DNA of 64,000 bases from Octopus sinensis. Taxonomy: Eukaryota. Under the pieces are notes generated by a model, which had not been told where the DNA came from, searched no databases, and saw nothing but the letters and a program-made list of their open reading frames with translations. Shown here piece after piece: positions 1 to 57,503 of the stretch. How positions within the stretch are numbered: position 1 is the stretch's first letter; the number at the start of each line of letters is the position of its first letter. A program made the translations under genes and the position numbers. The DNA is taken from positions 1,426,001 through 1,490,000 of the forward strand of contig NC_043014.1 in the NCBI RefSeq assembly GCF_006345805.1, given 5' to 3'.

Positions 1-1235
1 TTTTCTCTGTCCATCTTTTATTGGTCGTTTGTTTCAGCCTTGAGACTGTGGGATCTAGTCAAAGACAGGGATTCATTCTGTTGGTCTCTTTTGCTAAACT
101 GCTAAGTTGCAGGGGCATAAACAAAACAACAATGGTTGTCAAAGAGTGGGGGAGGGAGGACAACAACTAAGAAACACACACAGAAATACAAAAGGTTTCC
201 ACACAGTCTCCATCTACAGAATTCACTCACAAAACCTTGATCAGTTCAGGTCTGTAGAAGACAACAATTGCTCTAGGTACCATGCAATTGAACTATGAAA
301 AATGTCAGAGAAAGAAACCTGGCTGTTTCTTGCAATACATACAATCTAAAGCAAAATCTTTTCAGGGGCCCTAATGTGGATCCCCAATTTATTATTTTGT
401 TACGTGAACCCCCCAAAACCTCATATGGCCCTTCTGGGGCCATATAGACCCTCGATGAGAATCACTGAACATGACAGTAACCCCACTTGTGTGTCCAGTT
501 TTAAAATACAAAGGTTATGATCTGGAGGGGATCTGGCAGCTATTTCTAGCCAGTCAAACTACCATGTAGGGATTTCAGCCAGGCTTCTCTCCTCTAACAC
601 CTCCACATAAAGAGAGACAGGGAGAGGGGGTGAGTATATGACTGCTTGATTTGCTAGAAACAGCAGTCATGTGATCCTCAGTTTAAATACAACCCTGCTG
701 AAAAAAAAAAAAGGATTACAGTACACAATGAAGCATTAGGCTCAAAACTAGAGGTGGGATGGTCCCAGATGGAAACATCTGGCCAAGGCAGAGCTGAAAT
801 TAACAACAAAAACAAGATTCACAGTCCAACTAAGGAGTGGTCAGGTTTCAACAATCATGACCTCTCTGATGGATAAGGGAATGCTTAGTACTGACCTCTT
901 TTGTTAAGGGTCAGTGAATAGAGAGAGATAGGGGATGCACTCAGGTTTCTGGCTGGTGATTGGGGAGGGAAACGGGGGGGGGAGATTAAGTTGGGATGTA
1001 GACATGTGAGGGAAAAGTGGGGGGACAGAGAAAGAGAGAATGTGTAAGCCAGGCTAACATTTTACAGTTACTAAGTACCAACCCTATTAGGTACACACAA
1101 TAGATTTCCTGTGGGGTTAAACTTCTTACGGGTGGAGGGGGATCCTTGGCTTAATGGTAGTCTACTTGTATATATTACACCATACATTAGTATTGCTTGA
1201 TTGGGATCTTTTAGAAAAGATCCCTTGATTGTCCT

Positions 1236-1368
1236 AGCGTGGAAGGTGTTTATAAGCCATTTAAGAAACACACAAAAACTTAGATTCACTTCAAAGCGAC
1301 GAAAATATTTTGACAAATTAAATTTAATTTGTGTGTTTCTTAAATGGCTTACAAACACCTTCCACGCT
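1236..1368. mobile_element. MITE/foldback element with ~41-bp terminal inverted repeats
   Basis: agcgtggaaggtgtttataagccatttaagaaacacacaaa is the near-perfect reverse complement of 1328-1368. Confidence 0.7.
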
Positions 1369-1574
1369 GCAATTGTTTTCGTTCCAGCACACGATCTCAG
1401 ATCAGGTCACTTGCTATGCAAGTACATCTCCGTAACACACATAAGTTTTGAGATTTATCTCACTGCATTCGAGATACAAGAGACAGTCATAAACGCTGTC
1501 GTGTTGTGCAACCTCACGATGGACATAAAAAGACGGATCGACTGGCAGCGGAGACTTATTTCGTTTATATTACG

Positions 1575-1905
1575 TAAGCTTGCTTTCCAACCGAATGGTT
1601 CCCAGTTCAGTCCCACTGCATGGTATCTTGGACATATTCTCCTACAGCCCAACACTGCGAAAGTGCCACCTTGTGAGTAGATTTGGTAGGTGCAAACTGA
1701 AAGGAGTCCGTCGTATACTGCTTGAAAACCAGTGTTGGTTCGTTGACGTCCCTGTAACTTTGTGGTTCAGCAAAGAGACTGCTAGAAGATGTACTAGGCT
1801 TAGAAAAATGATGTACAGGGGTGGATTTGTTAGACTAAACCCTTCAAGGTGGTGCCCCAGCATGGCCGCAGTCTAATGACTGAAACGAGATGAACGATAA
1901 AGATA
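1575..1905 (+). mobile_element. Old tRNA-derived SINE (here 'family A')
   Basis: Diverged match to the intact copies at 46104 and 52405, including the ...cagcatggccgcagtc.aatgactgaaac tail. Confidence 0.65.
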
Positions 1906-2624
1906 ACCAAATATTCTACATTTTAGACTTCCAGTGAAATTGTATTTAAAACTATTGGTGGTACGTTTAAAATGACTCTCCCCAGACACAACAGAATATG
2001 CTTCAACACACGAACTCACATAAAGAATCTTGCAAACCAAATCCAAAAACGAAATATAAAGTATTGGTTTTACTAAATTTACTCACAGACAGACATTGGT
2101 CAGCCTGGGGCTATAACAGAAAGAACTTGCCCAAAATACAGCTCAACTGAAAATCATGTGTGTGCACATACACAGTATGACAAATATCTACACACACACA
2201 TATATATATACACAAATAACTTAGTGAAAACTTGTTCCTTTGGTTGTCTTTTCCCTTGTTTTTGATTATTCATCATAATATATAGGCACACATCCACAAT
2301 TGTGCCACTTCTCACCTCCTTCCTCATAATTTTCAAAGTGTTTAGGTTACGATTGTATCAGGATTTCATGTGGAAAAAAGAAATCCGTGAACGCACACAC
2401 ATAAATACGGATACACATATCACAATGTTTTTTTTCTCTCAAAAATTTGACATTTCGCTTTGTAGATATTTATGTGAGCGCACCCAGCAACCTTTTTTTT
2501 TTTTTCTTTTTCCAAATTAAATTCCGATATAACCAAAATCTACATCATCTGAAGCGCGGCGTATGTAGAAAAAGTTCATTTTACGAGGAAACAAATTCAG
2601 TTGGGGCACACTTATGTAGGTATG

Positions 2625-2670
<46 letters not shown>

Positions 2671-4680
2671 AATTGATTTGAGAACATAATCTTTTGTGGA
2701 GAATGGCGATTTGACGTCTATATCTAGCATGTTGACTGTCCACTTTTCGTGTTCAGTCCTTAATTGGTATATATAAATATTTTAATCTTCGGATTCTTTT
2801 TTAATATGCTAGACCACTGGTTTTAATTGATAAATATCAATCTCTACTCTTGATTAATTATATATATATATATATATATATACGCTAATATCGAACTGTG
2901 AGAATGGTGCTCAACAAAGTACATAAACGTGTGTGTACTTTATGAAGTGGAAGATAAATAAAGTCTATTGTTCTACGGATTTACATTTCATTCGAAACAA
3001 AAACATTCCCTGCACACGGTGAGATTCCACTAGGCGTGTACCAATAATGGATCCCTTTATTTCAGTACAGAAAACCAATAACAAATCATTATATAATCTA
3101 TAGATCAGCCCTCCTTCCCTGCCACTCCCATTTAGAACAGTAAAGGGGTAGAGTGGCGAAGGTAGGTCTCAGAGTTCAACGTCCCGCATTACGGTTAAAG
3201 GATTAACGGTTGTTGTGTTTTTTTTCGGCGGACCCCTTTAGGGCTTTAGGGTCGGGGAAGTCCCTTGAATTGGGGTCAAAGGTCCTCTGAATGCACCAGT
3301 TGGACTTCTTGTCACGTTGACGCAGGAGGATGTGCCAGAATTCACGTTGTAATGTTTACAGCGGTTGTTGAACTCCAAAATGGAGGAGAGAGACGAACAA
3401 GTGCCCCAGATTTCTGTGTGGATGTGTGTGTGTGCGCATTTCTGTGTCTGTCTCTCTTTCTCTCTATGCTGCATGTACGTAGAAGAGTTTTGTAATAGCC
3501 ATCCTTCGAAGTCCCTTATCACATGGAGAGAAAAAAAAGGTACGCAGCTGGGGGCTATGTGTACACACACCCGCACGCAGTATTATATATACACGTACAC
3601 AGTTATAAATATATGTATACACACACACACACATATACTAAAACAGATAGTTTACAGGTTTCAGGCTGCAGCGATTGTGGGGCAAGGGTTCAGTGGACCA
3701 CATCGACCCCATTACCAGAATATCTGATACCAATTCCTCTCACCCAGTTAAGTCAAACAGGCAAGTGCTTGCAACGGATTTGAACTGGCGAACTAAACAT
3801 CCATAGACCGATTGCTTAACCACACACCCAATTCGTCTCCACGAAATTCAAGTTTCATCAACGATATAAATAGTTTTTTTATGCTACGTGGAAAAGCATG
3901 AATACCACACATTCTCGTTCGTTTATATTTGTATCATTCTTTTACACAGAAATCCTCTCCGTTGGTGATCTCGGCGATCAGGTTTCAATTCCGTGACAGG
4001 AAGAAGCTACATGGGAGTGGCATGAATGTCAAAAAATCATCTTCGGAGCACATCAAATGCTTTAGGAAATATCTCTAATATACACATAACGATGCACATA
4101 TAGACATATGCGTGTGTGTGTATATATATATGTATATATATATATATATATATATAAAGGCAGGCTGTCAACATTCTTACGCATATACACACGTCTTTCT
4201 ATTATGTAAGTTAAAGCGATTATATACATATATATATATATATGTATACACACACACACACACACACAATCTATACATACATACATATACACATACCATT
4301 CATAAAACTGAATACACCCATAAAAGTACATACATACACATCATTGTGTGTATACATAGATGTGTATATATATATATATATATATTATACACGTAAGCAT
4401 AAAGTACGGTAAGATTTACTTAAAGTACATTGTGTGTAGAAACAGGAAGTAAATAATATATCTTGCGTATATATACATACATACATACAGAAATATATGT
4501 GTGTATATATATGTATGTATATTACATAAAAGTATGTGTGTATATAAATGGAAAGTTATAGAAAAAGTGAGTGATGTATAACAGAGATAAACAACAATTA
4601 TAGACACAACGGTGGTTGGGTTAATGAGGGTAATTATCTCTGATATTCTTGAAATGAATTAAGAAAAACTTTTTCCTCAC

Positions 4681-4727
4681 CAAACTTCAGTTTCTTCGTC
4701 TTTCACGGATTTACTCGACGGCGCCAT
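4681..4727 (-). CDS. Probable first coding exon of an unidentified divergent gene (MAPSSKSVKDEETEV+TG)
   Basis: Minus strand caagATGGCGCC (YY1-type/Kozak context), CpG-retaining unique sequence, then donor TTG|gtgagg at 4680. No convincing exon 2 inside the window. Confidence 0.5.
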
Positions 4728-4760
4728 CTTGCAGTTCCGTCAACTCACTCCCTCGCACTC

Positions 4761-5470
4761 TTACTCTTTCACTTTACTCACACTCTCTCTCCATATCTTA
4801 ATCTCTATCTAATTCCCTCCCCTGCTCTTGCCTCTATCTATCTTACTCTTTCACTTTACTCACACCCTCTCTCTCTATATCTTAATCTCTATCTAATTCC
4901 CTCTCTTGCTCTTGCTTCTATCTATCTTACTCTTTCACTTTACTCACACCCTCTCTCTCCATATCTTAATCTCTATCTAATTCCCTCCCCTGCTCTTGCT
5001 TCTATCTATCTTACTCTTTCACTTTACTCACACCCTCTCTCTCTATATCTTAATCTCTATCTAATTCCCTTCCCTGCTCTTGCTTCTATCTATCTTACTC
5101 TTTCACTTTATTCACACCCTCTCTCTCTATATCTTAATCTCTATCTAATTCCCTTCCCTGCTCTTGCTTCTATCTATCTTACTCTTTCACTTTACTCACA
5201 CCCTCTCTCTCTATATCTTAATCTCTATCTAATTCCCTCCCTTGCTCTTGCTTCTATCTATCTTACTCTTTCACTTTACTCACACCCTCTCTCTCTATAT
5301 CTTAATCTCTATCTAATTCCCTTCTTTGCTCTTGCTTCTATCTATCTTACTCTTTCACTTTACTCACACCCTCTCTCTCTATATCTTACTCTTTCACTTT
5401 ACTCACACTCTCTCTGTCTATACCTTACGCTTTCACTTTACTCACACCCTCTTTGTCTCTATCTTACTCT
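4761..5470. repeat. 84-bp pyrimidine-rich minisatellite (7 full units plus partials)
   Basis: Unit starts at 4761, 4843, 4927, 5011, 5095, 5179, 5263, 5347. Confidence 0.92.
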
Positions 5471-6298
5471 TTATCTAAACCGTTTCATTCTCTTTATCAA
5501 TTTCACTCTTTCACTTCCCTTACCCTCTCCCTTACTTTTTATCTGACTCAATCCCCTTCTCGCGCTCTCTCACACACCCTCTCTCTATACCATCTTTTTA
5601 TCTAACTCCTCCCCTCTATACATCTCTCACTCACTTCCCTTCTTTATGTCGATCTTAATCACACTTTCATTTCACTTATACTCCTCCCTCTCTACTTTAC
5701 TCTACTCCCCTTCTCTCTATCTATTTAGTCTTTCACTCCACTCCTTCATTCCCACTCTCTCCTCCTCTATACCCGTCTTACTCTTTATCTAATTCACTCC
5801 CTCCCTAATAAAGTCACTTCCTATCTCTACATCTCTCTCTTTCTCTATATATTACTGTTTCTTTATTTCACTACAACTCATGCTCTCCTCCTCTCTCTCT
5901 CTATCTTAATCTTTATATCTCTCCCTCTCTTACAAACTAACTTATTCTCTCTCTCTCTCCCCCCTCTCTCTCTCTGTCCATATCGTTCTCATTTCTGTAG
6001 CCTCTCTCTTTACTCCTACTCACTCTGTCTTTATGTATCTCTCTCTCTCACTTTGTCTTCTCTCTTTTACTAACTACTCTTACCTCTACTTCCCATTTTC
6101 TCACCCTTCATTCCTCTCGTTTCTCTCTCTCTATATTTCTTTCTTTCTTTCTTTTCTCTACTTGTCCTCTCTTTTTCATTTTCTTCTTCAATCACCCTCT
6201 CTCTTTCCTTCTCTATCTTTCTACATTATTTTTTTTCTTGCTCCATTTTCCTTTCTTTCTCCCTCTCTCTGACTCTGGTCGAGCTATCTATCTATCCA

Positions 6299-6397
<99 letters not shown>

Positions 6398-6434
6398 GTC
6401 TATCTATCTACCTAACTACCTACCTACCTGTCCA

Positions 6435-6469
<35 letters not shown>

Positions 6470-6723
6470 CTATCTATCCACGCTGAGTGACTCAAGGGTC
6501 AACAGTTTCGCATTTTGGCACTTATCAAATTGGCTTCAAACCAAGGTGATAGCATTTACATATCGATCTTAATAATAATCCTAACGAATAACGGGGAAAA
6601 ACTTTACCAAGAATCTTAAACCCGTTCTGAATGGACAGGAGGAGGAGGAGGAGGAGGAGTTAAATGTAATTTTACCAAAACAAAAAAAACAAAAAAACCC
6701 CTGTAATATTGATCGAATTTGAG

Positions 6724-7090
6724 GGCGGCGAGCCGGCACGCCGGGTAAAACACTTAGCGGCATTCGTTCACCCTTACGTTCCGAGTTCAAATTCCGCCGA
6801 GGCCAACTTTGCCTTTCGTCCTTTCGGGAGTCGGTAAAATAAGTTCCAGTTACGTAATGGGGTCGCTGTAATATATTTCTTTATTGCCCACAAGGGGTTA
6901 AACACAGAGGGACAAACAAGAACAGACAAACAGATTAAATCGACCCCAGTGTGTAACTGGTACTTTATTTATCGACCCCGAAAGGATGAAAGGCAAAGTC
7001 GACCTCGGCGGAATTTAAACTCAGAACGTAACGACAGACGAAATACGGCTACACATTTCGCCCGGCGTGCTAACGTTTCTGCCAGCTCGC
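6724..7090. mobile_element. Tail-to-tail inverted pair of tRNA-derived SINEs ('family C')
   Basis: Plus copy 6724-~6870 and minus copy ~6871-7090 share ggcgagctggcag...gagttcaaattccgccgaggtcgactttgcc; B-box GAGTTCAAATTCC. Confidence 0.8.
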
Positions 7091-7431
7091 TGTAATCGAC
7101 TAGCAGCCGCCTCGATATTGCAGGCCTTCTGCCTGTAACAGAAAGTATTGTCTTTAATTTCATTTAAGGCGAGACTTCTCTTTGTAGTAGTAGCCTAACC
7201 TATCAGGTGGTGCTATTAAATTAGACATGGCCTGGACCAATCTTCGGTCGAAATATATCTAAGTTTTAACCTTGTATCGATTTCTCTGATTGATTAAAAT
7301 GTGTCTATGAACAAGCGTCGTCAATGTCTACCGTGTTACCACGTTCATCGAACCGTGACGCTTAGAGTCGTACGCTGGTTTAAAATGGTGTCTGTTAAGC
7401 TCCAACCAGCTGGAACCTGTCGAAAGGTATA

Positions 7432-7640
7432 CTCTTTTACTCTTTTACTTGTTTCAGCCATTTGACTGCGGCCATGCTGGAGCACCGCCTTTAGTCGATC
7501 AAATCGACCCCGGGACTTATTCTTTGTAAGCCCAGTACTTATTCTATCGGTCTCTTTTGCCGAACCGCCAAGTGACGGGGACGTAAACACACCAGCATCG
7601 GTTGTCAAGCAATGCTAGGGGGACAAACACAGACACACAA

Positions 7641-7687
<47 letters not shown>

Positions 7688-7710
7688 TACGACAGGCTTC
7701 TTTCAGTTTG
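7432..7710 (-). mobile_element. Family A SINE, 3' part
   Basis: tactcttttactcttttacttgtttcag...gacaggcttctttcagttt matches other copies. Confidence 0.8.
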
Positions 7711-8076
7711 CCTTCAAACTTTGCTCTTGTTACATTTATTCAAGCCCCAAAGGATCCCCCTCAATACATGGCTGCGATGCTCCCCCACTACTTCTGCTCG
7801 TGATCAGAGATGCACATATTGTCAGCCACTAAGGGACATGCTCGGCTGGTTAAGGTCAAACAACTGACAGGAAAGCCTGTGGTGTTGAGCAGAATATTTG
7901 CTATAACGATATTTCTGCTTCAGCAACTCTGCGCTGGATCTGTGTGAAGTGTAGTGGGAAATAGGTCAGTTTCAGAACATTGACATCCAGGTCACAAAAG
8001 CAAAATTCTAGATGGGAGCAAATAGAAAATGGCATTTACTGAACAAAGACAAACATAAAAAAAATAATAATTTGTT

Positions 8077-8340
8077 ATACAGTGGATTTGGTAGACGGAA
8101 ACTGAAAGAAGCCCGTCGTATATATGTATATATATGCGTGTGTGTGTTTGTCCCCCTAGCATTGCTTGACAGCTGATGCTGGTGTGTCTATGTCCCCGTT
8201 ACTTAGCGGTTCGGCAAAAGAGACCGATAGAATAAGTACTGGGCTTACAAAAGAATAAGTCCCGGGCTCGAGTTGCTCGATTAAAGGCGGTGCTCCAGCA
8301 TGGCCGCAGTCAAATGACTGAAACAAGTAAAAGAGTAAAG
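8077..8340 (+). mobile_element. Family A SINE, 3' part
   Basis: gtggatttggtagacggaaactgaaagaagccc...aaatgactgaaacaagtaaaagagta. Confidence 0.8.
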
Positions 8341-9019
8341 TGTAAAAGAGAGTGATATCAACAGTTTCATTACACACACACACACACACACAGCACACAC
8401 ACACACACACACACACAAAGAGAATTAATTGTAAAGTCAATATTATAAATCCAATCGGTTGACAGCCAATTCATGATACTGAATGGTTTCATGTTGAAGA
8501 TCTTTCCAAATATGCAAAGGTAAATTAACAATCACCAGACATGGCTGAACGGAAGGATATAACTTCGGCTCTTTATTACTAGCTGTTTATGGGGCTCAGA
8601 AATGATAAAAAGAAACGGAACGAAACTCGTGGAAGAAAAAGTCTAAGAAAAACAAAACGAAAAAGAATTAGAGTACATCATAAGCTCATTAGAGTTATGT
8701 CCTCTAAATTGTTCCATGCAATAAAGCATTCAAGTGATAGATGTCAACCCCGAGTGTTGCATATATGACTGTAGAATGAAGAGGATATAAGGATGAGATG
8801 AAGAAGGTGAAGAGAGAAAAAAATTAGAAAGAAATGATAGAGATATTGGGAGGTTTATTTGAAGGACATACGTGGTCACGTGTGTGAATGGGTGTGTATA
8901 AATGCTGAGTATGGAGAAAATAAATTCCCTATTTATAGTGAGATGATTATTATTGAGAAAGTAGCCAATTGTTTCTACTAAGAGGGTGCCGGAACCGACC
9001 AGTTAGCTAAGATATATTA

Positions 9020-9560
9020 CCGATCGTGAGGGCAAGGGGAAAACATCCTGCTTTTAGAATAGGACTTTATGTGGAGGAAATACATCAATATAATCCTTTT
9101 GTCTGCCTAAAAAATCTGCAAGTCCAACTGTTGTTGATATAAGGTGTGCACTTTTCCAGTAATTTCCCGTTGATATTCTACTATAGAATATTTTCTTTTA
9201 ACAGACATATGTGTCTCTCCGATGTTGTGACATTATGTCTCTCCTAGATTTTAAAAGACAACTTGTGATTGTTGAATCTGGTTTTGAAGAGGGGAAGGTG
9301 ATGGAAAAAGAGGGGGAAATGGTAGTTATATGGGAATGGAGGTGTGTGTGTGGCGATGTTTGACTTATTCTGTTATTCAGTCTGCAGATGTCAAGGATGG
9401 TCCGTACATTTCTTTGTTCGATCTCATTTAAGGCATGACCAGCTTAAAGGAATTCTGAAGTAAACAGGTCAGCCGTTAAAGCCACAACAGCCATTAACTA
9501 TTGTCTGAATTGATAAATGACACTTTCTTAGAGTGACCTTTTAATTGTTTTCAGGTGGTG
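9020..9560 (-). mobile_element. Decayed Penelope-like retroelement (GIY-YIG region)
   Basis: Minus-strand fragment FKTRFNNHKLSFK resembles the PLE FKxRxNNHKxSF motif; multiple stops and frameshifts. Confidence 0.5.
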
Positions 9561-9932
9561 CAGTGGTTATAGTGTATAGCACCCTAAACATTGTTTGTTT
9601 GTTTGTTGGTTCCTTGTTCTATAATGTGTTAAAGGGCAGTTCTTGTTATTCCGTTTCAAAATGTTGTTTTGTTGTTTTTTTTCAAATTCCAGAAACGATA
9701 TTTTGCTTTTATGTGTTTACATAATATGATCATCTCCGTGTGTCTATTTATCACGTTTCCCCCGGATGTGATGATCTCCAACCCTTCCCCCAAAACCTGG
9801 TTCGTCAGTCGCCATCATTAGACTGTATCCGGCATAACAGAACAGGAACTTTATTTGAATATGCAAAACGTTTCACGTAAACAAATTTAAAAGATAATAA
9901 TATTCATTTTTACTTTTATCTTTATTTCATTT

Positions 9933-10399
9933 TTCTTCTTCTTCTTCTTCTTCTTCTTCTTCTTCTTCTTCTTCTTCTTCTTCTTCTTCTTTCTTCTTCT
10001 TCTTCTTCTTCTTCTTCTTCTTCTTCTTCTTCTTCTTCTTCTTCTTCTTTTCTTTTTCCTTCTTCTTTTTCTTTCTTTTTTCTTCTCTTCTTCCAATTCT
10101 TCTTCTTCTTTTTTTCTTCTCTTCTTCTTCTTCTCTTTTTCTTCTTCTTCTTCTTCTTCTTTCTTCTTTCTTCTTTCTTCTTCTCGTTTCTTTCTCCTTC
10201 TTCTTTTTCTTCTTTTCTTCTCATTCTTCCAATTCTTCTTCTTTCTTTTTCTTCTTCTTCTTCTTCTTCTTCTTCTCTCTTCTTCTTCTTTTCTCTTTTT
10301 CTTCTTTTTTTCTTTCTTCTTCCTTCTTCTTCTTTCTTTTCTTCTCTCTTCTTCTTCTTTCTTCTTTTCTTCTTCTTCTTCTTCTTTCATCATCATAAA

Positions 10400-10441
<42 letters not shown>
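9933..10441. repeat. Long degenerate (TTC)n tract followed by (ATC)n
   Basis: Direct reading; source of the spurious K/R/E-rich minus ORFs. Confidence 0.95.
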
Positions 10442-10706
10442 TACACACATGCTTTTGTATTTTTTTATGTATATTTTTTGATATCTGGATTTTTTGTCCT
10501 TTAAGCAACCAGCAAAACATAGATTTTTCAGTGTAAAGACGAACATTTCAAGCTTGAAACTCCGAAAAGGAGTAACTCACTGTAAACATTATTATTAAAA
10601 TAACAATTATCCCCCAGAAAAATGCCATCTCTACCCATTTTTTCAAATATATAATACTATACCAAAAACTTTCTTTTTATTATTCTACTATGTATATATA
10701 TATATC

Positions 10707-10757
10707 AGCTTCCTGATGATTTCATTTGAATGAAACAGTTCTAGTCCTGTAGAAGCT
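10707..10757 (+). ncRNA. Type I hammerhead ribozyme fold, canonical core
   Basis: AGCUUC / CUGAUGA / UUUC-AUUU-GAAU / GAA / ACAG-UUCUAGUC-CUGU / A / GAAGCU. Helix I 6 bp, helix III 4 bp, GUA cleavage triplet at 10749-51; 10.1-11.1 is a U.U mismatch. Confidence 0.72.
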
Positions 10758-10839
10758 CCTTCTATAAAATAAATTAATACTCTGCTATGTATTGAGTACC
10801 TGATTTAGTGGTAACCCGACTCAACCGGGACCTACATAT

Positions 10840-10842
10840 TAT

Positions 10843-10901
<59 letters not shown>

Positions 10902-11116
10902 TATAAATGAAAGTATTAAAAAAAAGCACACAAATTTCCACACGAAAGCACGTGATCTCTGCCCTGGCATGTAGCTTCAACCGTGGTTTTTCTGACGTGA
11001 ATTTGCTACCAGGGTATCGTTACCGAATTATCCATACTAGGATAATTCATTCAACTACTTATATATATATATATATATATAGCAATAATAATCTCTGAAC
11101 GATATATATATAGGCC

Positions 11117-11233: not shown

Positions 11234-11334
11234 TACACACAATCTACTGACGTAAAAGAAAGAAAAAGTGGTCAGAGTTATCTACCGTGCAAGTGCTTCC
11301 GTCGTTTGGTGTCGCTGCTGTTCCAGTGAAAATA
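10840..11334 (+). promoter_or_regulatory. Putative STRIP1 promoter/5'UTR
   Basis: DRE-like TATCGATA 10842-49, E-box CACGTG 10949-54, CRE-like TGACGTGA 10993-11000 and TGACGTAA 11248-55; CpG-rich unique sequence 11245-11334. Motifs are short and could be chance. Confidence 0.4.
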
Positions 11335-11406
11335 ATGGACGAAGGTGGATGGCGAGGTTTGCCCAAACTGCAAGAACTGTTTCGTCGGCAAAGACGGGGA
11401 TCGGAG
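11335..11406 (+). CDS. STRIP1: STRIP1/2 orthologue exon 1 (MDEGGWRGLPKLQELFRRQRRGSE)
   Basis: ATG at 11335, donor GAG|gtgagc. Resembles the STRIP N-terminal R-x-Q-R-x-x-S-E motif; phase 0 joins exon 2. Confidence 0.85.
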
Positions 11407-11795
11407 GTGAGCAAGACACACCACACCACACCACACCTTTATATATATACACTCCATCCACTTACTCACCACATATATATATATATATACACGAATAGAC
11501 ACAGATATATCTATCTGTCTCTATAATATATATGAATCGGTGTTTGTTTGGAGAGATTCTTAATCGTTGAACGTCAAAACCCGAAAATGCTTCTTCGTTT
11601 TCTTGCCTTTTCTCTTTAATGCAGACTCACAGCGGCTATACATACATACATGTATATATATAGGCCATATATATATGTATATATATACACACATAATATA
11701 TACACACACACATATATATATATGTAGGTATGTATGTATGTATATATATATATATAGCGTGTTATATATGAGGGTGATGGACTGTTTTTACATGC

Positions 11796-13927: not shown

Positions 13928-13997
13928 ACGATCAACGAATCCCCAGATTTAGAGTTTTCTTATGGAGATTCGGATTTCTATGAAAATGAAATCTCAG
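13928..13997 (+). CDS. STRIP1: STRIP1 exon 2 (TINESPDLEFSYGDSDFYENEIS)
   Basis: Acceptor ctttctttttag; ESPDLEFxYxD motif; non-canonical donor AG|gcgagt; 70 nt. Confidence 0.92.
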
Positions 13998-19861: not shown

Positions 19862-20734
19862 GTTTGTCCTTCCACCTTTCCTTCATCCCATTCTGCCTCT
19901 CCCTACATTTACCCCTATATGTTAGCATTGCCTTACCAACATCACTGTCACTCTCCTCCTTCTATATCCTGCTTATCATCATCATCATCGTCTTTAGTTG
20001 CAGTAAGTTTATTTCCTTCGTATCCTCTTTCTTTTGCTGCTATGGTCAAGTACTGCATCTCTTTTCGTCTTTGTTCTGCTGTATCATTTCGTCTGTAAGG
20101 CCCTGAAGTCTTTGGCATCTATCTGTCGGTGCAGGCGTGGCTGTGTGGTAAGAAGCTTGCTTCCCAACCACATGGTTCCAGGTTCAGTCTCATTGCATGG
20201 AACCTCGGACAAGTGTCTTCTGCAAAGCCTCAGCTCGACTAAAGACTTGTGAATCGATTTGGTTGGCAGAAACTGAAAGAAACCCTGTCGTGTGTGTTTG
20301 TGTCTGTGTTTACGTCTCTGTAACTTACCGGTTCAACAAAAGTTTCAGGCTTAAAAAAAATATATGTTCTGTCACTCATTCATTTGACTAAAACTTTTAC
20401 AAGGTGTTAAAAGCAATATCCAAACGTGATTGATGCCAGTGCCTCCTGACTGGCTCCTGTGCCGGTGGCACGTAAAAGCACCCACTACACTCTCAGAGTG
20501 GTTGGCGTTAGGAAGGGCATCCAGCTGTAGAAACACTGCCAGATCTGACTGGAGCTTGGTGCATCCGCTGACTCTCCAGACCTCAGTCAAGCCGTCCAAC
20601 TCATGCCAGTATGGAAAACGGACATTAAACGATGATGATGATGATATGGCTGTGTGGTTAAGAAGAAGCTTGCTTTCAACCATGTGATTCTGAGTTCAGT
20701 CTCACTGCCCAGCACCTTCAAATATTTTCTCGTC

Positions 20735-21345
20735 TCGGCTGGCCCCCGTGCCGGTGACACGTAAAAGCACCGTCCGTTCTGTCCCGTTGCCAGCATCGCC
20801 TGGCCCCTGCCGGTGACACGTAAAAGCACCATCCGTTCGTGTCCGTTGCCAGCATCGCCTGGCCCCGTGCCGGTGACCATAAAGCACCGTCCGTTTGTGT
20901 CCGTTGCCAGCATCGCCTGGCCCCGTGCCGGTGACCGTAAACACTGTCGTTCGTGTCCGTTGCCAGCATCGCCTGGCCCCGTGCCGGTGACACGTAAAAG
21001 CACCGTCCTTCGTGCCGTTGCCAGCATCGCCTGCCCCGTCCGGTGACACGTAAAAGCACCATCCGTTCGTGTCCGTTGCCAGCATCGCCTGGCCCTGTGC
21101 CGGTGGCACATAAAAAGCACCATCCGTTCATGGCCGTTTGCCAGCTCTGTCTGGCACCTGTGCAGGTGGCACGTAAAAAACACCCACTACACTCGCGGAG
21201 TGGTTGGCGTTAGGAAGGGCATCCAGCCGTAGAAACACTGCCAGATTTGACTGGGCCTGACGAAGCCTTCCAGCTTCACAGACCCCAGTTGACCCGTCCA
21301 ACCCATGCTAGCATGGAAAGCGGACGCTAAATGATGATGATGATG
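20735..21345 (+). mobile_element. 'Family B' SINE-like element with about 7 internal tandem ~59-bp repeats and (GAT)n tail
   Basis: Units ggccccgtgccggtgacacgtaaaagcaccatccgttcgtgtccgttgccagcatcgcct at 20741-21152, then body gagtggttggcgttaggaagggcatccagc...catggaaagcggacg. Other copies at ~20430, 27775, 31770, 38840, 44095, 47700, 49910, 52590. Confidence 0.8.
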
Positions 21346-39294: not shown

Positions 39295-39565
39295 GTAAGT
39301 TTTCTTCATTTTCATTTCCGATTCCAAAGTCTGTCGTCCTTCTTAAAAAAAAAATGGAAATTATTATTAGATATTATATAAGTCTGCTAATAGCTATGTT
39401 GTTCTAATCCCTTTTGGTGGGGCTGTTGACAGTTTCTGTCTTAGTAGTGCTTAACCACGGGCCACAGATCCCCAGGGATTCACAAAGTGGAGACCAAAGA
39501 GCTGTGTTCAGAAGTTTAGAAAGTCGCAAAGTAAAATTAATAATTACTCAATCACAAAAATTTCT

Positions 39566-39936
39566 AAATTATTCATTAATATCTAATTACTCAGTCATTT
39601 ATAATTACTCAGTTGTACATAATTACTCATTGATATCTAATTACTCAGTTATGCATGATTACTCAGTTATGCATAATTACTCATTTATATCTAATTACTC
39701 AGTTATACATAATTACTCATTTATATCTAATTACTCAGTTATACATAATTACTCATTTATATCTAATTACTCAGTTATACATAATTACTCATTTATATCT
39801 AATTACTCAGTTGTACATAATTGCTCATTGATGTCTATTTACTCAATTTTGCACAATTACTTGGTTATGATTAATTACTCAGTTGTGCTTAATTGCTCAT
39901 ATCTAATTGCTCAGTTATGCATAATTACTCATTTAC
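39566..39936. repeat. 18/36-bp AT-rich tandem array in intron 12
   Basis: Alternating taattactcagttataca / taattactcatttatatc, about 21 monomers. Confidence 0.92.
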
Positions 39937-40200
39937 ATCACATGAGAGGAGGAACAGGGAAAATGAGTTAGGGCATTGGAAAAAATGCCTTGTGGTATTT
40001 TCTTGTACCTTTATGGTCTGAGTTTAAATGCTGTCAAGATCAGCTTTTCCTTTCATCTTTTCAGGGTTGAAAAAGTAAGGTACCAGTAATTACTGGAATC
40101 GGTGGTATCCGAATATTCCCCATCCCCTGGAAATTGCAGTCCTTGAGCCTGAATCCCCAAAATGTTTAATTTTGACAATTTCTTTTCATTTCTGTTGCAG

Positions 40201-46622: not shown

Positions 46623-46748
46623 ATATAATTAAGGGTTCCTAAATAAGGATGCCAAGTGCTGGGAACACAAAAATTTTCACTCTTGATAAATTTATCTCCT
46701 TTTTGTGTTCCCAGCACTTGGCATCCTTATTTAGGAGCCCTTAATTAT

Positions 46749-55430: not shown

Positions 55431-55714
55431 ATAGTCCTTGAAATATTTCAGATTTTGCCAATTCCATATTTGCTGCTCCAACACCTGTCTGAAACATTTC
55501 CATAGGAAACTAATCAGCCGTTCCTCACAGCATTTAGTGTAGAATTATTCCTATGTTTGGTCTTTTATTGCTAGTTTGAATATTCATCAGACATCGGTCC
55601 TGTTTGGCGCCGTTTGATGGAACCTACCAGTAATAGAAAGAACAACAGTTAAATTTAAATTCTAAGAATGCATGTTAACCATTTCATGTAAGGTTTCTGT
55701 CAGTTAAGGATAAC

Positions 55715-55749
<35 letters not shown>

Positions 55750-57229
55750 GGCGTGTGTGCAAGATAGTTTTGCAGAAGGGTAGAACTTGCTCCTGCATGC
55801 AAGTCTCCCACTTCTCTATACCACTAATGTTTATCCAAGAGAATGACCACTGATTTAGAATTGATGTGGTCTGGCACCAATGCCATGGTAGGTCCTTGCA
55901 GTCAGAATGCAAAGAACCAGATCCGATACTCCAAGACATCTCAGGTTTCTCTCTGATACAATCTCTGCCAATCCTCTCCCTCAGGTTGGTCGTTGTTTTT
56001 CAATCAACCCATGACGATACGAAAGGCAAAGCTGTCCTCTCAGTGTTTTGAACTCAGTGTGCAGCAAGTCAGAACAAGAAGTCTGTGAAGCACACTTACC
56101 AAAATTCTAAAGACTCTGCCAGTTCTTTGTTTATTTTGTTTTGTTTACTCTGTTTGTTGTTGAAATTCTTTGCCTTTGTTTCAATTAATTTTGAAAATAA
56201 CAAAGAAATTAGTAAAATAATTTTGTCATTAATTAACCTTGTGTTTGGGCCATGAATTAACATGAAAATTTGATGGAACAAGTTTCATAATTCAGATAAT
56301 TTTAATTCTTTTTTTTTTCATGTTTGTATTGAAATATATTGCTCTTGTTTCAAGACATTTAGTAAAGCAATGAAGAATTTATTAAAATGATTTTGTCTAT
56401 AAAGGCGGTGCTCCAGCATGGCCACAGTCGAATGTCTGAAGCAAGTAAAAGAAATAAAAGAAAATTAATTTGGTATTTAGGACAACATGGAATTTCGATG
56501 GAAGGTTTTAGTTTAGATTACTTTAAGATGAGGGATGTGTTTTGTGGAATTAAGGGCAGTCTCTGGTGGAATAGTATTAAAAGGGTTGAATATCAAGATT
56601 CCAACAGATTTCAGTTTTACTTGGAAAATTTGGATCTTGATTTTAAACAAATTGAGGATGTTATTGCTTTGACCTCCACTTTCCTGTTGCTCCCTGGGTC
56701 AGACAGAATCTGTTGAGTCTGATTCTCTGTGGCCAGGTGCCCTTCCTGTTGCCAACCTTCATCTGCCTCCAAGCAAGTGAATCATTCTGTCAGTCCTTCA
56801 AACAGAGATAGCACAATGTGGGGTGGACGGGATTTTGCAAGTGGACGACACCATTCGTAAGACAGTAATGCTTCTTTTTTACAATTAGTGCACGTTGTCA
56901 GGAAAAGGAGACACAAATAAAAAATATGTACACCCACACACACACACACTGTGGATGTCTTTCAGTTCCCATCTGTCAAATTTACTCACAAGGCTTTGAT
57001 CAACCAAAGACACGTGAGAAGCTGCACAGTGGGATTGAACTTGAAACATTATGGGAAGCAAGAATCTCATTCACACAACCATGTCTGTACCTACACACAC
57101 ACACACACACACACACCATACAAACACATAAGTGCAAAACAAGGTGGTAAAAATAATACTCAAATACTAAAGGTAGAATAAAATACTACTTCATCAATGC
57201 TGAAGTGTTTTTTTGGTTTTAATAAAACT

Positions 57230-57287
<58 letters not shown>

Positions 57288-57351
57288 GTGTATGTATAGC
57301 AGAATTAGAAATAGAAAGTCCTTGGTACAGTATTATGTATTTGAAAAATAT

Positions 57352-57503
57352 GAATAGAAATGGCTTACCTGTTAATTTTTCCACTTTAATAATTAGATGA
57401 TCTATAAATTATTAGGTGCTTACAAATTGCTTTGTAGGCACCTAATGATTTATAAACAGTTTATCAATAAAGTGGGAAAATTAACAGAAAAACCATTTCC
57501 GTT
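57352..57503. mobile_element. AT-rich hairpin MITE/foldback
   Basis: 57359-57426 pairs with 57431-57497 (about 80% by eye), loop ttgc; flanked by microsatellites. Confidence 0.65.

What the first reader, a model, noticed from the sequence alone, without database searches (positions are those of the whole stretch)
10707..10757. Near-canonical type I hammerhead ribozyme just upstream of the STRIP1 promoter
All core nucleotides are present (CUGAUGA, GAAA, GUA triplet), with a 6-bp helix I and a 4-bp helix III. Helix III (ACAG..CUAG..CUGU) is a decayed palindrome, as in dimer-acting Penelope-type hammerheads. The one defect is U.U at 10.1-11.1. It would cut any plus-strand RNA approaching STRIP1 after position 10751, so it could act as an insulator against read-through from the divergent promoter; that role is inference.
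Basis: partly seen in the sequence, partly recalled or inferred. Interest (0 to 1): 0.7.

Follow-up and report, generated by a model that had tools for sequence, protein, structure and literature searches.

The report
Lone weak hammerhead motif upstream of STRIP1
A 51-base stretch about 580 bases upstream of the STRIP1 start codon spells a complete hammerhead self-cutting RNA motif, but it is a single, weakly folding copy that fails the standard family models, so it is most likely a leftover of a mobile element, not a working gene insulator.

Summary
It has a 6-bp helix I, CUGAUGA, GAAA, a 4-bp helix III and a GUA cleavage triplet, with cutting predicted after 10751. Chance would give such a motif about 1e-4 times per 64-kb window, or about 4 times per 2.7-Gb genome.

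"Near-canonical, one defect" is too generous:
- Helix II is only U-A, U-A, C-G above the U.U mismatch, and is unstable alone (+0.5 kcal/mol).
- A perfect 6-bp palindrome (10720-10735) competes with helix II and buries G12-A14.
- Flanking hairpins compete for both strands of helix I.
- The active fold takes 0.4% of the predicted ensemble, against 56% for a known active hammerhead.
- The best Rfam hammerhead score is 13.3 bits against a threshold of 48.5.

There is no second copy in the window, even a diverged one, and no reverse transcriptase or endonuclease ORF. The Penelope-type features are not met. The cuttlefish STRIP1 locus has no counterpart.

My best reading is an orphan hammerhead relic of a retroelement, with weak or no activity. 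The insulator idea has no support and could not be tested here. STRIP1 exon 1 (11335-11406) is confirmed, so "upstream of the promoter" is plausible.

The parts
10707..10712 (+). Helix I, 5' strand (AGCUUC)
   Evidence: Pairs with 10752-10757 in 6 Watson-Crick pairs. In genomic context its pairing probability is about 0.01.
10713..10719 (+). Core C3-A9 (CUGAUGA)
   Evidence: Exact consensus. It is 1 of 12 CTGATGA sites in the window, counting both strands, and the only one with hammerhead context.
10720..10731 (+). Helix II and loop 2 (U.U, then U-A, U-A, C-G, loop AUUU)
   Evidence: Read from the sequence. As an isolated hairpin it scores +0.5 kcal/mol, so it is unstable.
10732..10735 (+). 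Core G12-A13-A14-A15.1 (GAAA)
   Evidence: Exact consensus. G12, A13 and A14 are paired in the minimum-free-energy fold.
10735..10750 (+). Helix III (ACAG/CUGU, 4 bp including A15.1-U16.1) with the 8-nt loop UUCUAGUC
   Evidence: A self-duplex of two such segments pairs 12 of 16 positions at -12.8 kcal/mol.
10751..10751 (+). A17; predicted scissile bond between 10751 and 10752 (GUA triplet)
   Evidence: Position follows from hammerhead numbering applied to the sequence. Cleavage was not tested.
10752..10757 (+). Helix I, 3' strand (GAAGCU)
10720..10735 (+). Competing perfect palindrome TTTCAT-TTGA-ATGAAA
   Evidence: Five of its six pairs form the helix of the minimum-free-energy fold, with probability 0.56-0.79 in context. 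It removes G12-A14 from the core.
10703..10718 (+). Competing hairpin UAUCAG/CUGAUG, which sequesters helix I 5' strand and core C3-G8
   Evidence: Present in the minimum-free-energy fold of 10680-10790 and of 10650-10850.
10748..10766 (+). Competing hairpin UGUAGAAG/CUUCUAUA, which sequesters helix I 3' strand
   Evidence: Present in the minimum-free-energy fold in genomic context.
10706..10846 (.). 141-nt unique island that carries the motif at its 5' edge, between two (TA)n tracts
   Evidence: No other copy in the window by blastn with word size 7. The tracts are at 10693-10705 and 10847-10897.
10624..10705 (+). 3' end of an interspersed repeat with a microsatellite tail, abutting the island
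   Evidence: 82.6% identical to 57364-57296 on the minus strand. Both copies run into (TA)n/(CA)n.
11335..11406 (+). STRIP1 exon 1 coding part (MDEGGWRGLPKLQELFRRQRRGSE), donor GTGAGC at 11407 (context)
   Evidence: Cuttlefish exon 1 reads MDSTDGGCRGLPKLQELFRRQRRDSE. Downstream exons from 13928 to 54156 were found by tblastn.

Best explanation
This is a solitary, degenerate type I hammerhead motif. It is most likely a relic of a hammerhead-bearing retroelement (a Penelope-like element end or a retrozyme-type repeat) that landed in the microsatellite-rich tract upstream of STRIP1.

If the plus strand is transcribed and the RNA reaches the three-helix fold, the 2'-OH of A17 (10751) would attack the next phosphate. 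That would leave a 2',3'-cyclic phosphate on 10751 and a 5'-OH on G10752.

The active fold is strongly disfavoured for four reasons:
- Helix II is U.U plus three weak pairs.
- A 6-bp palindrome buries G12-A14.
- Flanking hairpins take both helix I strands.
- There is no recognisable loop-loop tertiary brace.

I therefore expect slow or no cleavage at cellular Mg2+ and no regulatory role.

Shown: the motif, its statistics, its predicted folding, its singleton status and the gene context. Inferred: the retroelement origin and the low activity.
For: Motif and statistics:
- The core is complete and the type I topology is correct.
- It is too good for chance in one window, with 9.4e-5 expected.
- Its helix lengths, 6 for helix I and 4 positions for helix II, match those given for canonical metazoan type I hammerheads (PMC4209133).

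Precedents and genomic setting:
- A U.U at the base of helix II occurs in the roughly 60,000-copy axolotl HHR_Amex2 family, which cleaves 22% in 1 h as a monomer (PMC7229834).
- Octopus genomes carry many Penelope elements, some recently active (PMC13282606).
- Several PLE clades prefer microsatellite targets, including (TA)n (PMC8557442). The 141-nt island lies between two (TA)n tracts, right after another repeat's microsatellite tail.

Evidence for weak activity:
- The hammerhead fold scores -6.7 against a minimum free energy of -8.8 kcal/mol and takes 0.4% of the ensemble. The Schistosoma yardstick takes 56%, and an in-silico G10.1-C11.1 version takes 14%.
- Helix I has a pairing probability of about 0.01 in genomic context.
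- The fold z-score is -0.57.
- Rfam finds nothing at gathering thresholds, and only a partial Hammerhead_3 match of 13.3 bits against 48.5.

Evidence for an orphan copy:
- There is no second or diverged copy in 64 kb by descriptor, blastn or a covariance model.
- No hammerhead lies within 10 kb upstream of cuttlefish STRIP1.
Against: - No family members were found, so the retroelement origin rests on analogy.
- The motif does not resemble PLE minimal hammerheads in helix lengths.
- No RT or endonuclease ORF was found among the nine long ORFs scanned.
- (TA)n tracts are so common here (67 tracts, 30 gaps of 200 nt or less) that the sandwich is weak evidence of insertion.
- Neutral decay that hit only 10.1 and 11.1, while sparing the core and 13 stem pairs, would be a little odd.
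- Secondary-structure prediction ignores tertiary contacts and co-transcriptional folding.
- Hammerheads with a reduced helix II can still cleave in vitro (PMC544870), so activity cannot be excluded.
Confidence: 0.55

Rival explanations
1. Chance. The motif is a set of nested short inverted repeats in AT-rich, low-complexity DNA that happens to spell the hammerhead core. It was never part of a ribozyme.
For: - About 4 such motifs are expected per 2.7-Gb genome at this quality. More are expected if other topologies or core variants would also have been accepted.
- Helix II plus GAAA is really one perfect palindrome, TTTCATTTGAATGAAA.
- The fold is no better than shuffles, with z = -0.57.
- Rfam models do not recognise it.
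- No relatives were found anywhere I could search.
Against: - Only 9.4e-5 are expected per 64-kb window, and 0 of 400 simulated windows reached this quality.
- The helix I and II lengths and the centred palindromic loop 3 match metazoan type I habits, and the descriptor did not require those.
- Real hammerhead relics should outnumber 4 per genome by far in a PLE-rich genome.
Confidence: 0.25
2. A domesticated, active hammerhead. It cleaves plus-strand transcripts that run toward STRIP1 and creates a 5'-OH entry point for exonucleolytic termination, so it insulates the STRIP1 promoter.
For: - The core is complete and helices I and III are intact.
- The motif ends 578 nt upstream of the STRIP1 ATG, just before a unique segment with E-box and CRE-like motifs at 10949-10954, 10993-11000 and 11248-11255.
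- Hammerheads with U.U at 10.1/11.1 can cleave, and so can those with a minimal helix II.
Against: - There is no evidence of plus-strand transcription.
- The predicted active fold is 0.4% of the ensemble, and helix I is outcompeted in context.
- No tertiary-contact elements are recognisable.
- No counterpart lies upstream of cuttlefish STRIP1, although that divergence is too deep to be decisive.
- A divergent promoter does not produce plus-strand RNA toward STRIP1.
Confidence: 0.05
3. A C/D-box snoRNA-like element. UGAUGA would be the C box and AGCUU/AAGCU the terminal stem.
For: Rfam SNORD102 aligns over exactly 10707-10757 at 17.9 bits, E = 0.71. Weak snR51 and snoMe28S matches also appear.
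Against: - All scores are far below the gathering scores of 44-48.
- There is no D box (CUGA) before the 3' stem; the sequence there reads CCUGUAGAAGCU.
- At 51 nt it is shorter than typical C/D snoRNAs.
- It is intergenic, not intronic.
Confidence: 0.01

Closest known systems
Canonical metazoan type I hammerheads of non-LTR retrozymes (coral, mussel, axolotl; Cervera & de la Pena 2020, PMC7229834)
   Same: - Type I topology and a full core.
- Helix I of 6 bp, and helix II of 4 positions with a 4-nt loop.
- Low-GC surroundings.
- U.U at the base of helix II, as in axolotl HHR_Amex2.
- A helix III more stable than in amphibian motifs, as described for invertebrates.
   Different: - It is not in a tandem repeat of 170-400 bp; it is a single copy in 64 kb.
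- Helix III is longer (4 bp plus an 8-nt loop).
- Helix II is A/U-rich and unstable.
- No loop 1/loop 2 contact nucleotides are recognisable.
- It scores below the Rfam thresholds.
Minimal hammerheads in the pseudo-LTRs of Penelope-like elements (Cervera & de la Pena 2014, PMC4209133)
   Same: - Type I core.
- Partly palindromic helix III/loop 3 that could extend as a dimer (12 of 16 pairs).
- PLEs are abundant in octopus genomes, and some PLE clades target microsatellites.
   Different: - PLE motifs have a 6-8 bp helix II with G10.1-C11.1 and an extra base after A9.
- They have a helix I of 4-5 bp and no or a 1-2 bp helix III.
- They come in pairs flanking an RT/GIY-YIG ORF or within 50 kb of each other.
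- None of these is seen here.
Solitary conserved hammerheads in amniote introns (HH9, HH10) and the discontinuous rodent Clec2 3'UTR hammerhead
   Same: An isolated genomic hammerhead near or within a host gene, not in a tandem array. This is the model for a possible domesticated role.
   Different: Those are conserved across species and match Rfam models or were shown to cleave. Here conservation is untested, the Rfam score is far below threshold, and the site is intergenic.

Membership tests
Hammerhead ribozyme (general) | Conserved core: C3 U4 G5 A6 N7 G8 A9, G12 A13 A14, A15.1-U16.1, H17 not G | tested here: met
   CUGAUGA at 10713-10719, GAAA at 10732-10735, U16.1 at 10750, A17 at 10751.
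Hammerhead ribozyme (general) | Helices I and III flank the core in one of the three circular permutations | tested here: met
   Helix I has 6 Watson-Crick pairs and helix III has 4 bp. The open helix is I, so it is type I.
Hammerhead ribozyme (general) | Stable helix II closed by a 10.1-11.1 base pair (G-C in nearly all natural examples) | tested here: not met
   U.U at 10720/10731, then only U-A, U-A, C-G. The hairpin scores +0.5 kcal/mol. The G10.1-C11.1 pair is called highly conserved in PMC4209133. An exception exists in axolotl Amex2.
Hammerhead ribozyme (general) | The hammerhead secondary structure is the favoured fold of the RNA | tested here: not met
   It takes 0.4% of the ensemble, against 56% for the Schistosoma yardstick. 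The minimum-free-energy fold pairs G12-A14. Helix I has P about 0.01 with flanks.
Hammerhead ribozyme (Rfam clan CL00010: Hammerhead_1, _3, _II, HH9, HH10) | Covariance-model score at or above the gathering threshold | tested here: not met
   No match at gathering thresholds. No hammerhead family at E<=10 in 261 nt. In 66 nt there is only a partial Hammerhead_3 match of 13.3 bits against 48.5, E = 1.3.
Hammerhead ribozyme (general) | Site-specific self-cleavage giving 2',3'-cyclic phosphate and 5'-OH ends | not testable with these tools
   Needs in vitro transcription or end-specific RNA sequencing.
Hammerhead ribozyme (general) | Helices supported by covariation among homologues | tested here: inconclusive
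   No homologue was found in the window, in the cuttlefish locus, or in the viral and metagenome collections.
Penelope-like-element minimal hammerhead | Lies in a pseudo-LTR next to an RT/GIY-YIG ORF | tested here: not met
   No ORF over 100 aa lies near the motif apart from low-complexity ones. Pfam finds no RT or endonuclease in 9 long ORFs of the window. Short degraded fragments were not scanned.
Penelope-like-element minimal hammerhead | Second motif in tandem or within 50 kb, for dimeric action | tested here: not met
   It is the only hit in the window, which covers 10.7 kb upstream and 53 kb downstream. This holds for the type I descriptor, the minimal-hammerhead descriptor and covariance model R1.
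Penelope-like-element minimal hammerhead | Helix II of 6-8 bp with an unpaired base after A9, helix I of 4-5 bp, helix III absent or 1-2 bp | tested here: not met
   Here helix II has 3 pairs plus a mismatch and no extra base. Helix I has 6 bp and helix III has 4 bp plus an 8-nt loop.
Penelope-like-element minimal hammerhead | Palindromic 15.2-16.2 / loop 3 | tested here: inconclusive
   The loop centre CUAG is palindromic and the outer 4 loop bases are not; 12 of 16 positions pair. The chance of a centred 4-nt palindrome is about 1/16.
Metazoan non-LTR retrozyme | Tandem repeats of about 170-400 bp, each with a type I hammerhead | tested here: not met
   A single 141-nt island with no repeat of it in the window.
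C/D-box snoRNA | C box RUGAUGA near the 5' end, D box CUGA near the 3' end, terminal stem | tested here: not met
   No CUGA lies before the 3' stem. The best Rfam snoRNA score is 19.3 bits against 44.

The most novel reading that the evidence does not exclude
The motif is a host-retained, catalytically competent hammerhead. It co-transcriptionally severs plus-strand RNA about 0.6 kb ahead of the STRIP1 start codon. That would make it a ribozyme-based transcriptional insulator or terminator at an animal promoter.
Probability: 0.04. Interest if true: 0.7.

Novelty: new member of a known kind. Interest (0 to 1): 0.2.

Why it matters
If it is only a relic, it is one more of the many hammerhead traces that retroelements leave in animal genomes, and it matters little. 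Its main use is as a caution: a perfect core and two good helices do not make a working ribozyme. If it did cleave in vivo and were conserved among octopuses, it would be a rare case of a solitary ribozyme co-opted next to a promoter in an invertebrate. It would also give a direct test of ribozyme-driven transcription termination.

Tried and rejected
- Rfam was run at gathering thresholds on the whole window. It was also run at E<=10 on the whole window, on 261 nt and on 66 nt. No usable hammerhead hit appeared. The many miRNA-like hits are TA/CA microsatellites and long inverted repeats.
- I looked for other copies by blastn with word size 7, two descriptor scans and a single-sequence covariance model. 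None was found.
- A public-collection scan used the helix II and core pattern with 10.1 and 11.1 left free. The viral collection gave 0 hits. The metagenome collection gave one GC-rich contig (L001) with no helix I or III, which is a chance match.
- Orthologous site: two protein searches with STRIP1 segments returned no octopus protein. The best hits were 81% identity (a Logan contig) and 73% (Sepia pharaonis). Only the cuttlefish locus could be fetched, and it has no hammerhead upstream. That divergence is too deep for non-coding DNA, so the result says little. L002 was not exported to the script sandbox, so it was examined only with the built-in tools.
- Supplementary files of the PLE and hammerhead papers were not held, so no octopus PLE consensus could be compared.
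- The (TA)n sandwich was weighed as evidence of insertion and downgraded, because such sandwiches are common in this window.
- The snoRNA reading was rejected because there is no D box.
- ARAGORN found no tRNA-like or SINE head.
- I did not establish any upstream gene or "divergent promoter". ORFs in 1-10,000 look like repeats and low-complexity sequence.

Full report
**What is there**

Window 10707-10757 (+) reads AGCUUC CUGAUGA UUUC-AUUU-GAAU GAAA CAG-UUCUAGUC-CUG U A GAAGCU. In hammerhead numbering:
- Helix I is 6 Watson-Crick pairs (10707-10712 with 10752-10757).
- C3-A9 is CUGAUGA (10713-10719).
- Helix II is U.U at 10.1/11.1 followed by U-A, U-A, C-G, with loop AUUU.
- G12-A15.1 is GAAA (10732-10735).
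- Helix III is A-U, C-G, A-U, G-C, with the 8-nt loop UUCUAGUC.
- The cleavage triplet is GUA, with the scissile bond after 10751.

**Is it more than chance?**

A descriptor scan of both strands finds this as the only hammerhead-like site, even with helices relaxed to 4/2/2 pairs. A minimal Penelope-type descriptor finds nothing.

| Test | Result |
|---|---|
| 400 simulated windows (first-order Markov), lax level | 0.0275 hits per window |
| 400 simulated windows, this quality | 0 hits |
| Importance sampling (8 million core contexts), this quality | 9.4e-5 per 64 kb, about 4 per 2.7-Gb genome |
| Importance sampling, lax level | 0.011 per window |

So the motif is unexpected in one window but not impossible somewhere in a large genome. 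Allowing other topologies would raise these numbers several-fold.

**How good a hammerhead is it?**

Rfam results:
- There are no matches at gathering thresholds anywhere in the window.
- No hammerhead family appears at E<=10 in a 261-nt slice.
- In a 66-nt slice there is only a partial Hammerhead_3 alignment of 13.3 bits against a gathering score of 48.5.

Thermodynamic results:
- The 51-mer folds no better than shuffles (-8.8 kcal/mol, z = -0.57).
- The minimum-free-energy fold keeps helices I and III but replaces helix II with UUCAU/AUGAA. That hairpin is part of a perfect 6-bp palindrome, TTTCAT-TTGA-ATGAAA (10720-10735), and it pairs G12, A13 and A14.
- The hammerhead register scores -6.7 kcal/mol and takes 0.4% of the ensemble.
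- Helix II alone is +0.5 kcal/mol.
- With genomic flanks, helix I drops to a probability of about 0.01, because UAUCAG/CUGAUG (10703-10718) and UGUAGAAG/CUUCUAUA (10748-10766) form instead.

As a yardstick, the same calculation gives 56% for the Schistosoma type I hammerhead. That sequence was recalled from memory and closed with a GAAA loop. An in-silico G10.1-C11.1 version of the candidate gives 14%.

"Near-canonical with one defect" is therefore too kind.

Two literature points keep activity open:
- The axolotl HHR_Amex2 family has a U.U at the base of helix II and still cleaves 22% in an hour as a monomer, and better as a dimer (PMC7229834).
- Engineered hammerheads with helix II cut to one pair or none cleave in vitro (PMC544870).

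Structure prediction also ignores tertiary contacts and co-transcriptional folding.

**Penelope-type and dimer claim**

According to PMC4209133, PLE minimal hammerheads have these features:
- a helix II of 6-8 bp
- a conserved G10.1-C11.1
- an extra base after A9
- a helix I of 4-5 bp
- little or no helix III
- a partner copy in tandem or within 50 kb

None of these holds here.

Two helix III segments could pair at 12 of 16 positions (-12.8 kcal/mol). Eight of those pairs follow automatically from the stem, and a centred 4-nt palindrome has about a 1 in 16 chance. With a 4-bp helix III the motif would not depend on a dimer.

The helix lengths (6 and 4) fit the canonical metazoan type I, or retrozyme, architecture better. 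But retrozymes are tandem repeats, and this is a single copy. blastn, the descriptors and a covariance model built from the candidate (R1) find no second or diverged copy in the window.

**Surroundings**

- The motif sits at the 5' edge of a 141-nt unique island (10706-10846) between (TA)6.5 and (TA)25.
- Immediately upstream, 10624-10700 is the 3' end of an interspersed repeat. Its other copy (57364-57296, minus strand, 82.6% identity) also runs into a TA/CA microsatellite.
- This is what a short retroelement fragment inserted into a microsatellite tail would look like, and several PLE clades prefer such targets (PMC8557442).
- However, the window holds 67 (TA)n tracts and 30 inter-tract gaps of 200 nt or less, so the arrangement is weak evidence.
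- No RT or endonuclease domain was found in nine long ORFs, and there is no tRNA-like head.
- Octopus genomes do carry many Penelope elements, some recently active (PMC13282606).

**Gene context**

- A tblastn probe with human STRIP1 (recalled from memory, used only to locate exons) finds a plus-strand STRIP1 orthologue with exons from 13934 to 54156.
- Exon 1 is at 11335-11406 (MDEGGWRGLPKLQELFRRQRRGSE, donor GTGAGC), and exon 2 starts at 13928.
- The cuttlefish Sepia pharaonis orthologue (L002; assembly identified through PMC13402157) has the same exon 1, MDSTDGGCRGLPKLQELFRRQRRDSE.
- The motif therefore ends 578 nt upstream of the start codon.
- The unique segments between carry an E-box and two CRE-like sites.
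- "Just upstream of the promoter" is plausible, although no TSS is known.
- I found no evidence for or against an upstream gene.

**Conservation**

Octopus genomes could not be reached, because two protein searches returned no octopus STRIP1. The cuttlefish locus has no hammerhead-like site within 10 kb upstream and no Rfam hammerhead, and R1 finds nothing there. That divergence is too deep for neutral or lineage-specific non-coding sequence. It only rules out ancient conservation.

**Verdict**

My ranking of the interpretations is:

| Interpretation | Confidence |
|---|---|
| Orphan hammerhead relic of a retroelement, with weak or no activity and no demonstrated role | about 0.55 |
| Chance set of nested inverted repeats | about 0.25 |
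| Working insulator ribozyme | about 0.05 |
| C/D-box snoRNA (no D box) | about 0.01 |

The remaining weight is unassigned. The decisive data are copy number and orthologous sites in Octopus genomes, strand-specific transcription, RNA end mapping and a simple cleavage assay. Interest is low unless those data show conservation or in vivo cleavage.

Noticed in passing
window 11335-11406, 13928-13996, then exons to 54156 (+): A complete-looking STRIP1 (striatin-interacting protein 1) orthologue fills most of the window. Exon 1 encodes MDEGGWRGLPKLQELFRRQRRGSE and is conserved in cuttlefish. At least 17 exon matches were found by tblastn. The acidic middle part (human residues about 353-429) was not located.
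   Followed up: partly
window 9920-10445: About 500 bp of (CTT)n, then (CAT)n on the plus strand, lies about 0.3 kb upstream of the motif. This is a long homopurine/homopyrimidine tract that could form triplex DNA or affect chromatin near the STRIP1 promoter.
   Followed up: no
window 10624-10705 and 57296-57364 (-): Two copies (82.6% identity) of the 3' end of an interspersed repeat. Each ends in a TA/CA microsatellite, which suggests a SINE-like element with a microsatellite tail.
   Followed up: partly
window 6783-7023, 46625-46748, 1238-1367: Long, near-perfect inverted repeats that score 56-69 bits against plant miRNA precursor models, below their gathering scores. The one at 46625-46748 matches on both strands. 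They are probably MITE-like foldback elements, not miRNA genes.
   Followed up: no
window 55618-55838 (+): A sub-threshold SCARNA7 match (37.1 bits against 65, E = 5.4e-5) lies about 1.5 kb downstream of the last STRIP1 coding exon.
   Followed up: no
window 20587-21183 (-) and 39414-39971 (+): Two minisatellites give long repetitive ORFs. The first has repeated GTGPGDAGNGHER-like units. The second has NYSVIH-type hexapeptide units that trip the Pfam Hexapep model. They are tandem-repeat artefacts, not genes.
   Followed up: partly
window 10949-10954, 10993-11000, 11248-11255: An E-box (CACGTG) and two CRE-like sites (TGACGTGA, TGACGTAA) lie in the unique segments between the motif and the STRIP1 ATG. 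They are candidate promoter elements.
   Followed up: no
L002 27475-27581 (+): A 5S rRNA match above threshold (43.4 bits against 38) lies inside the cuttlefish STRIP1 gene range. It may be a 5S-derived SINE or a pseudogene in an intron.
   Followed up: no
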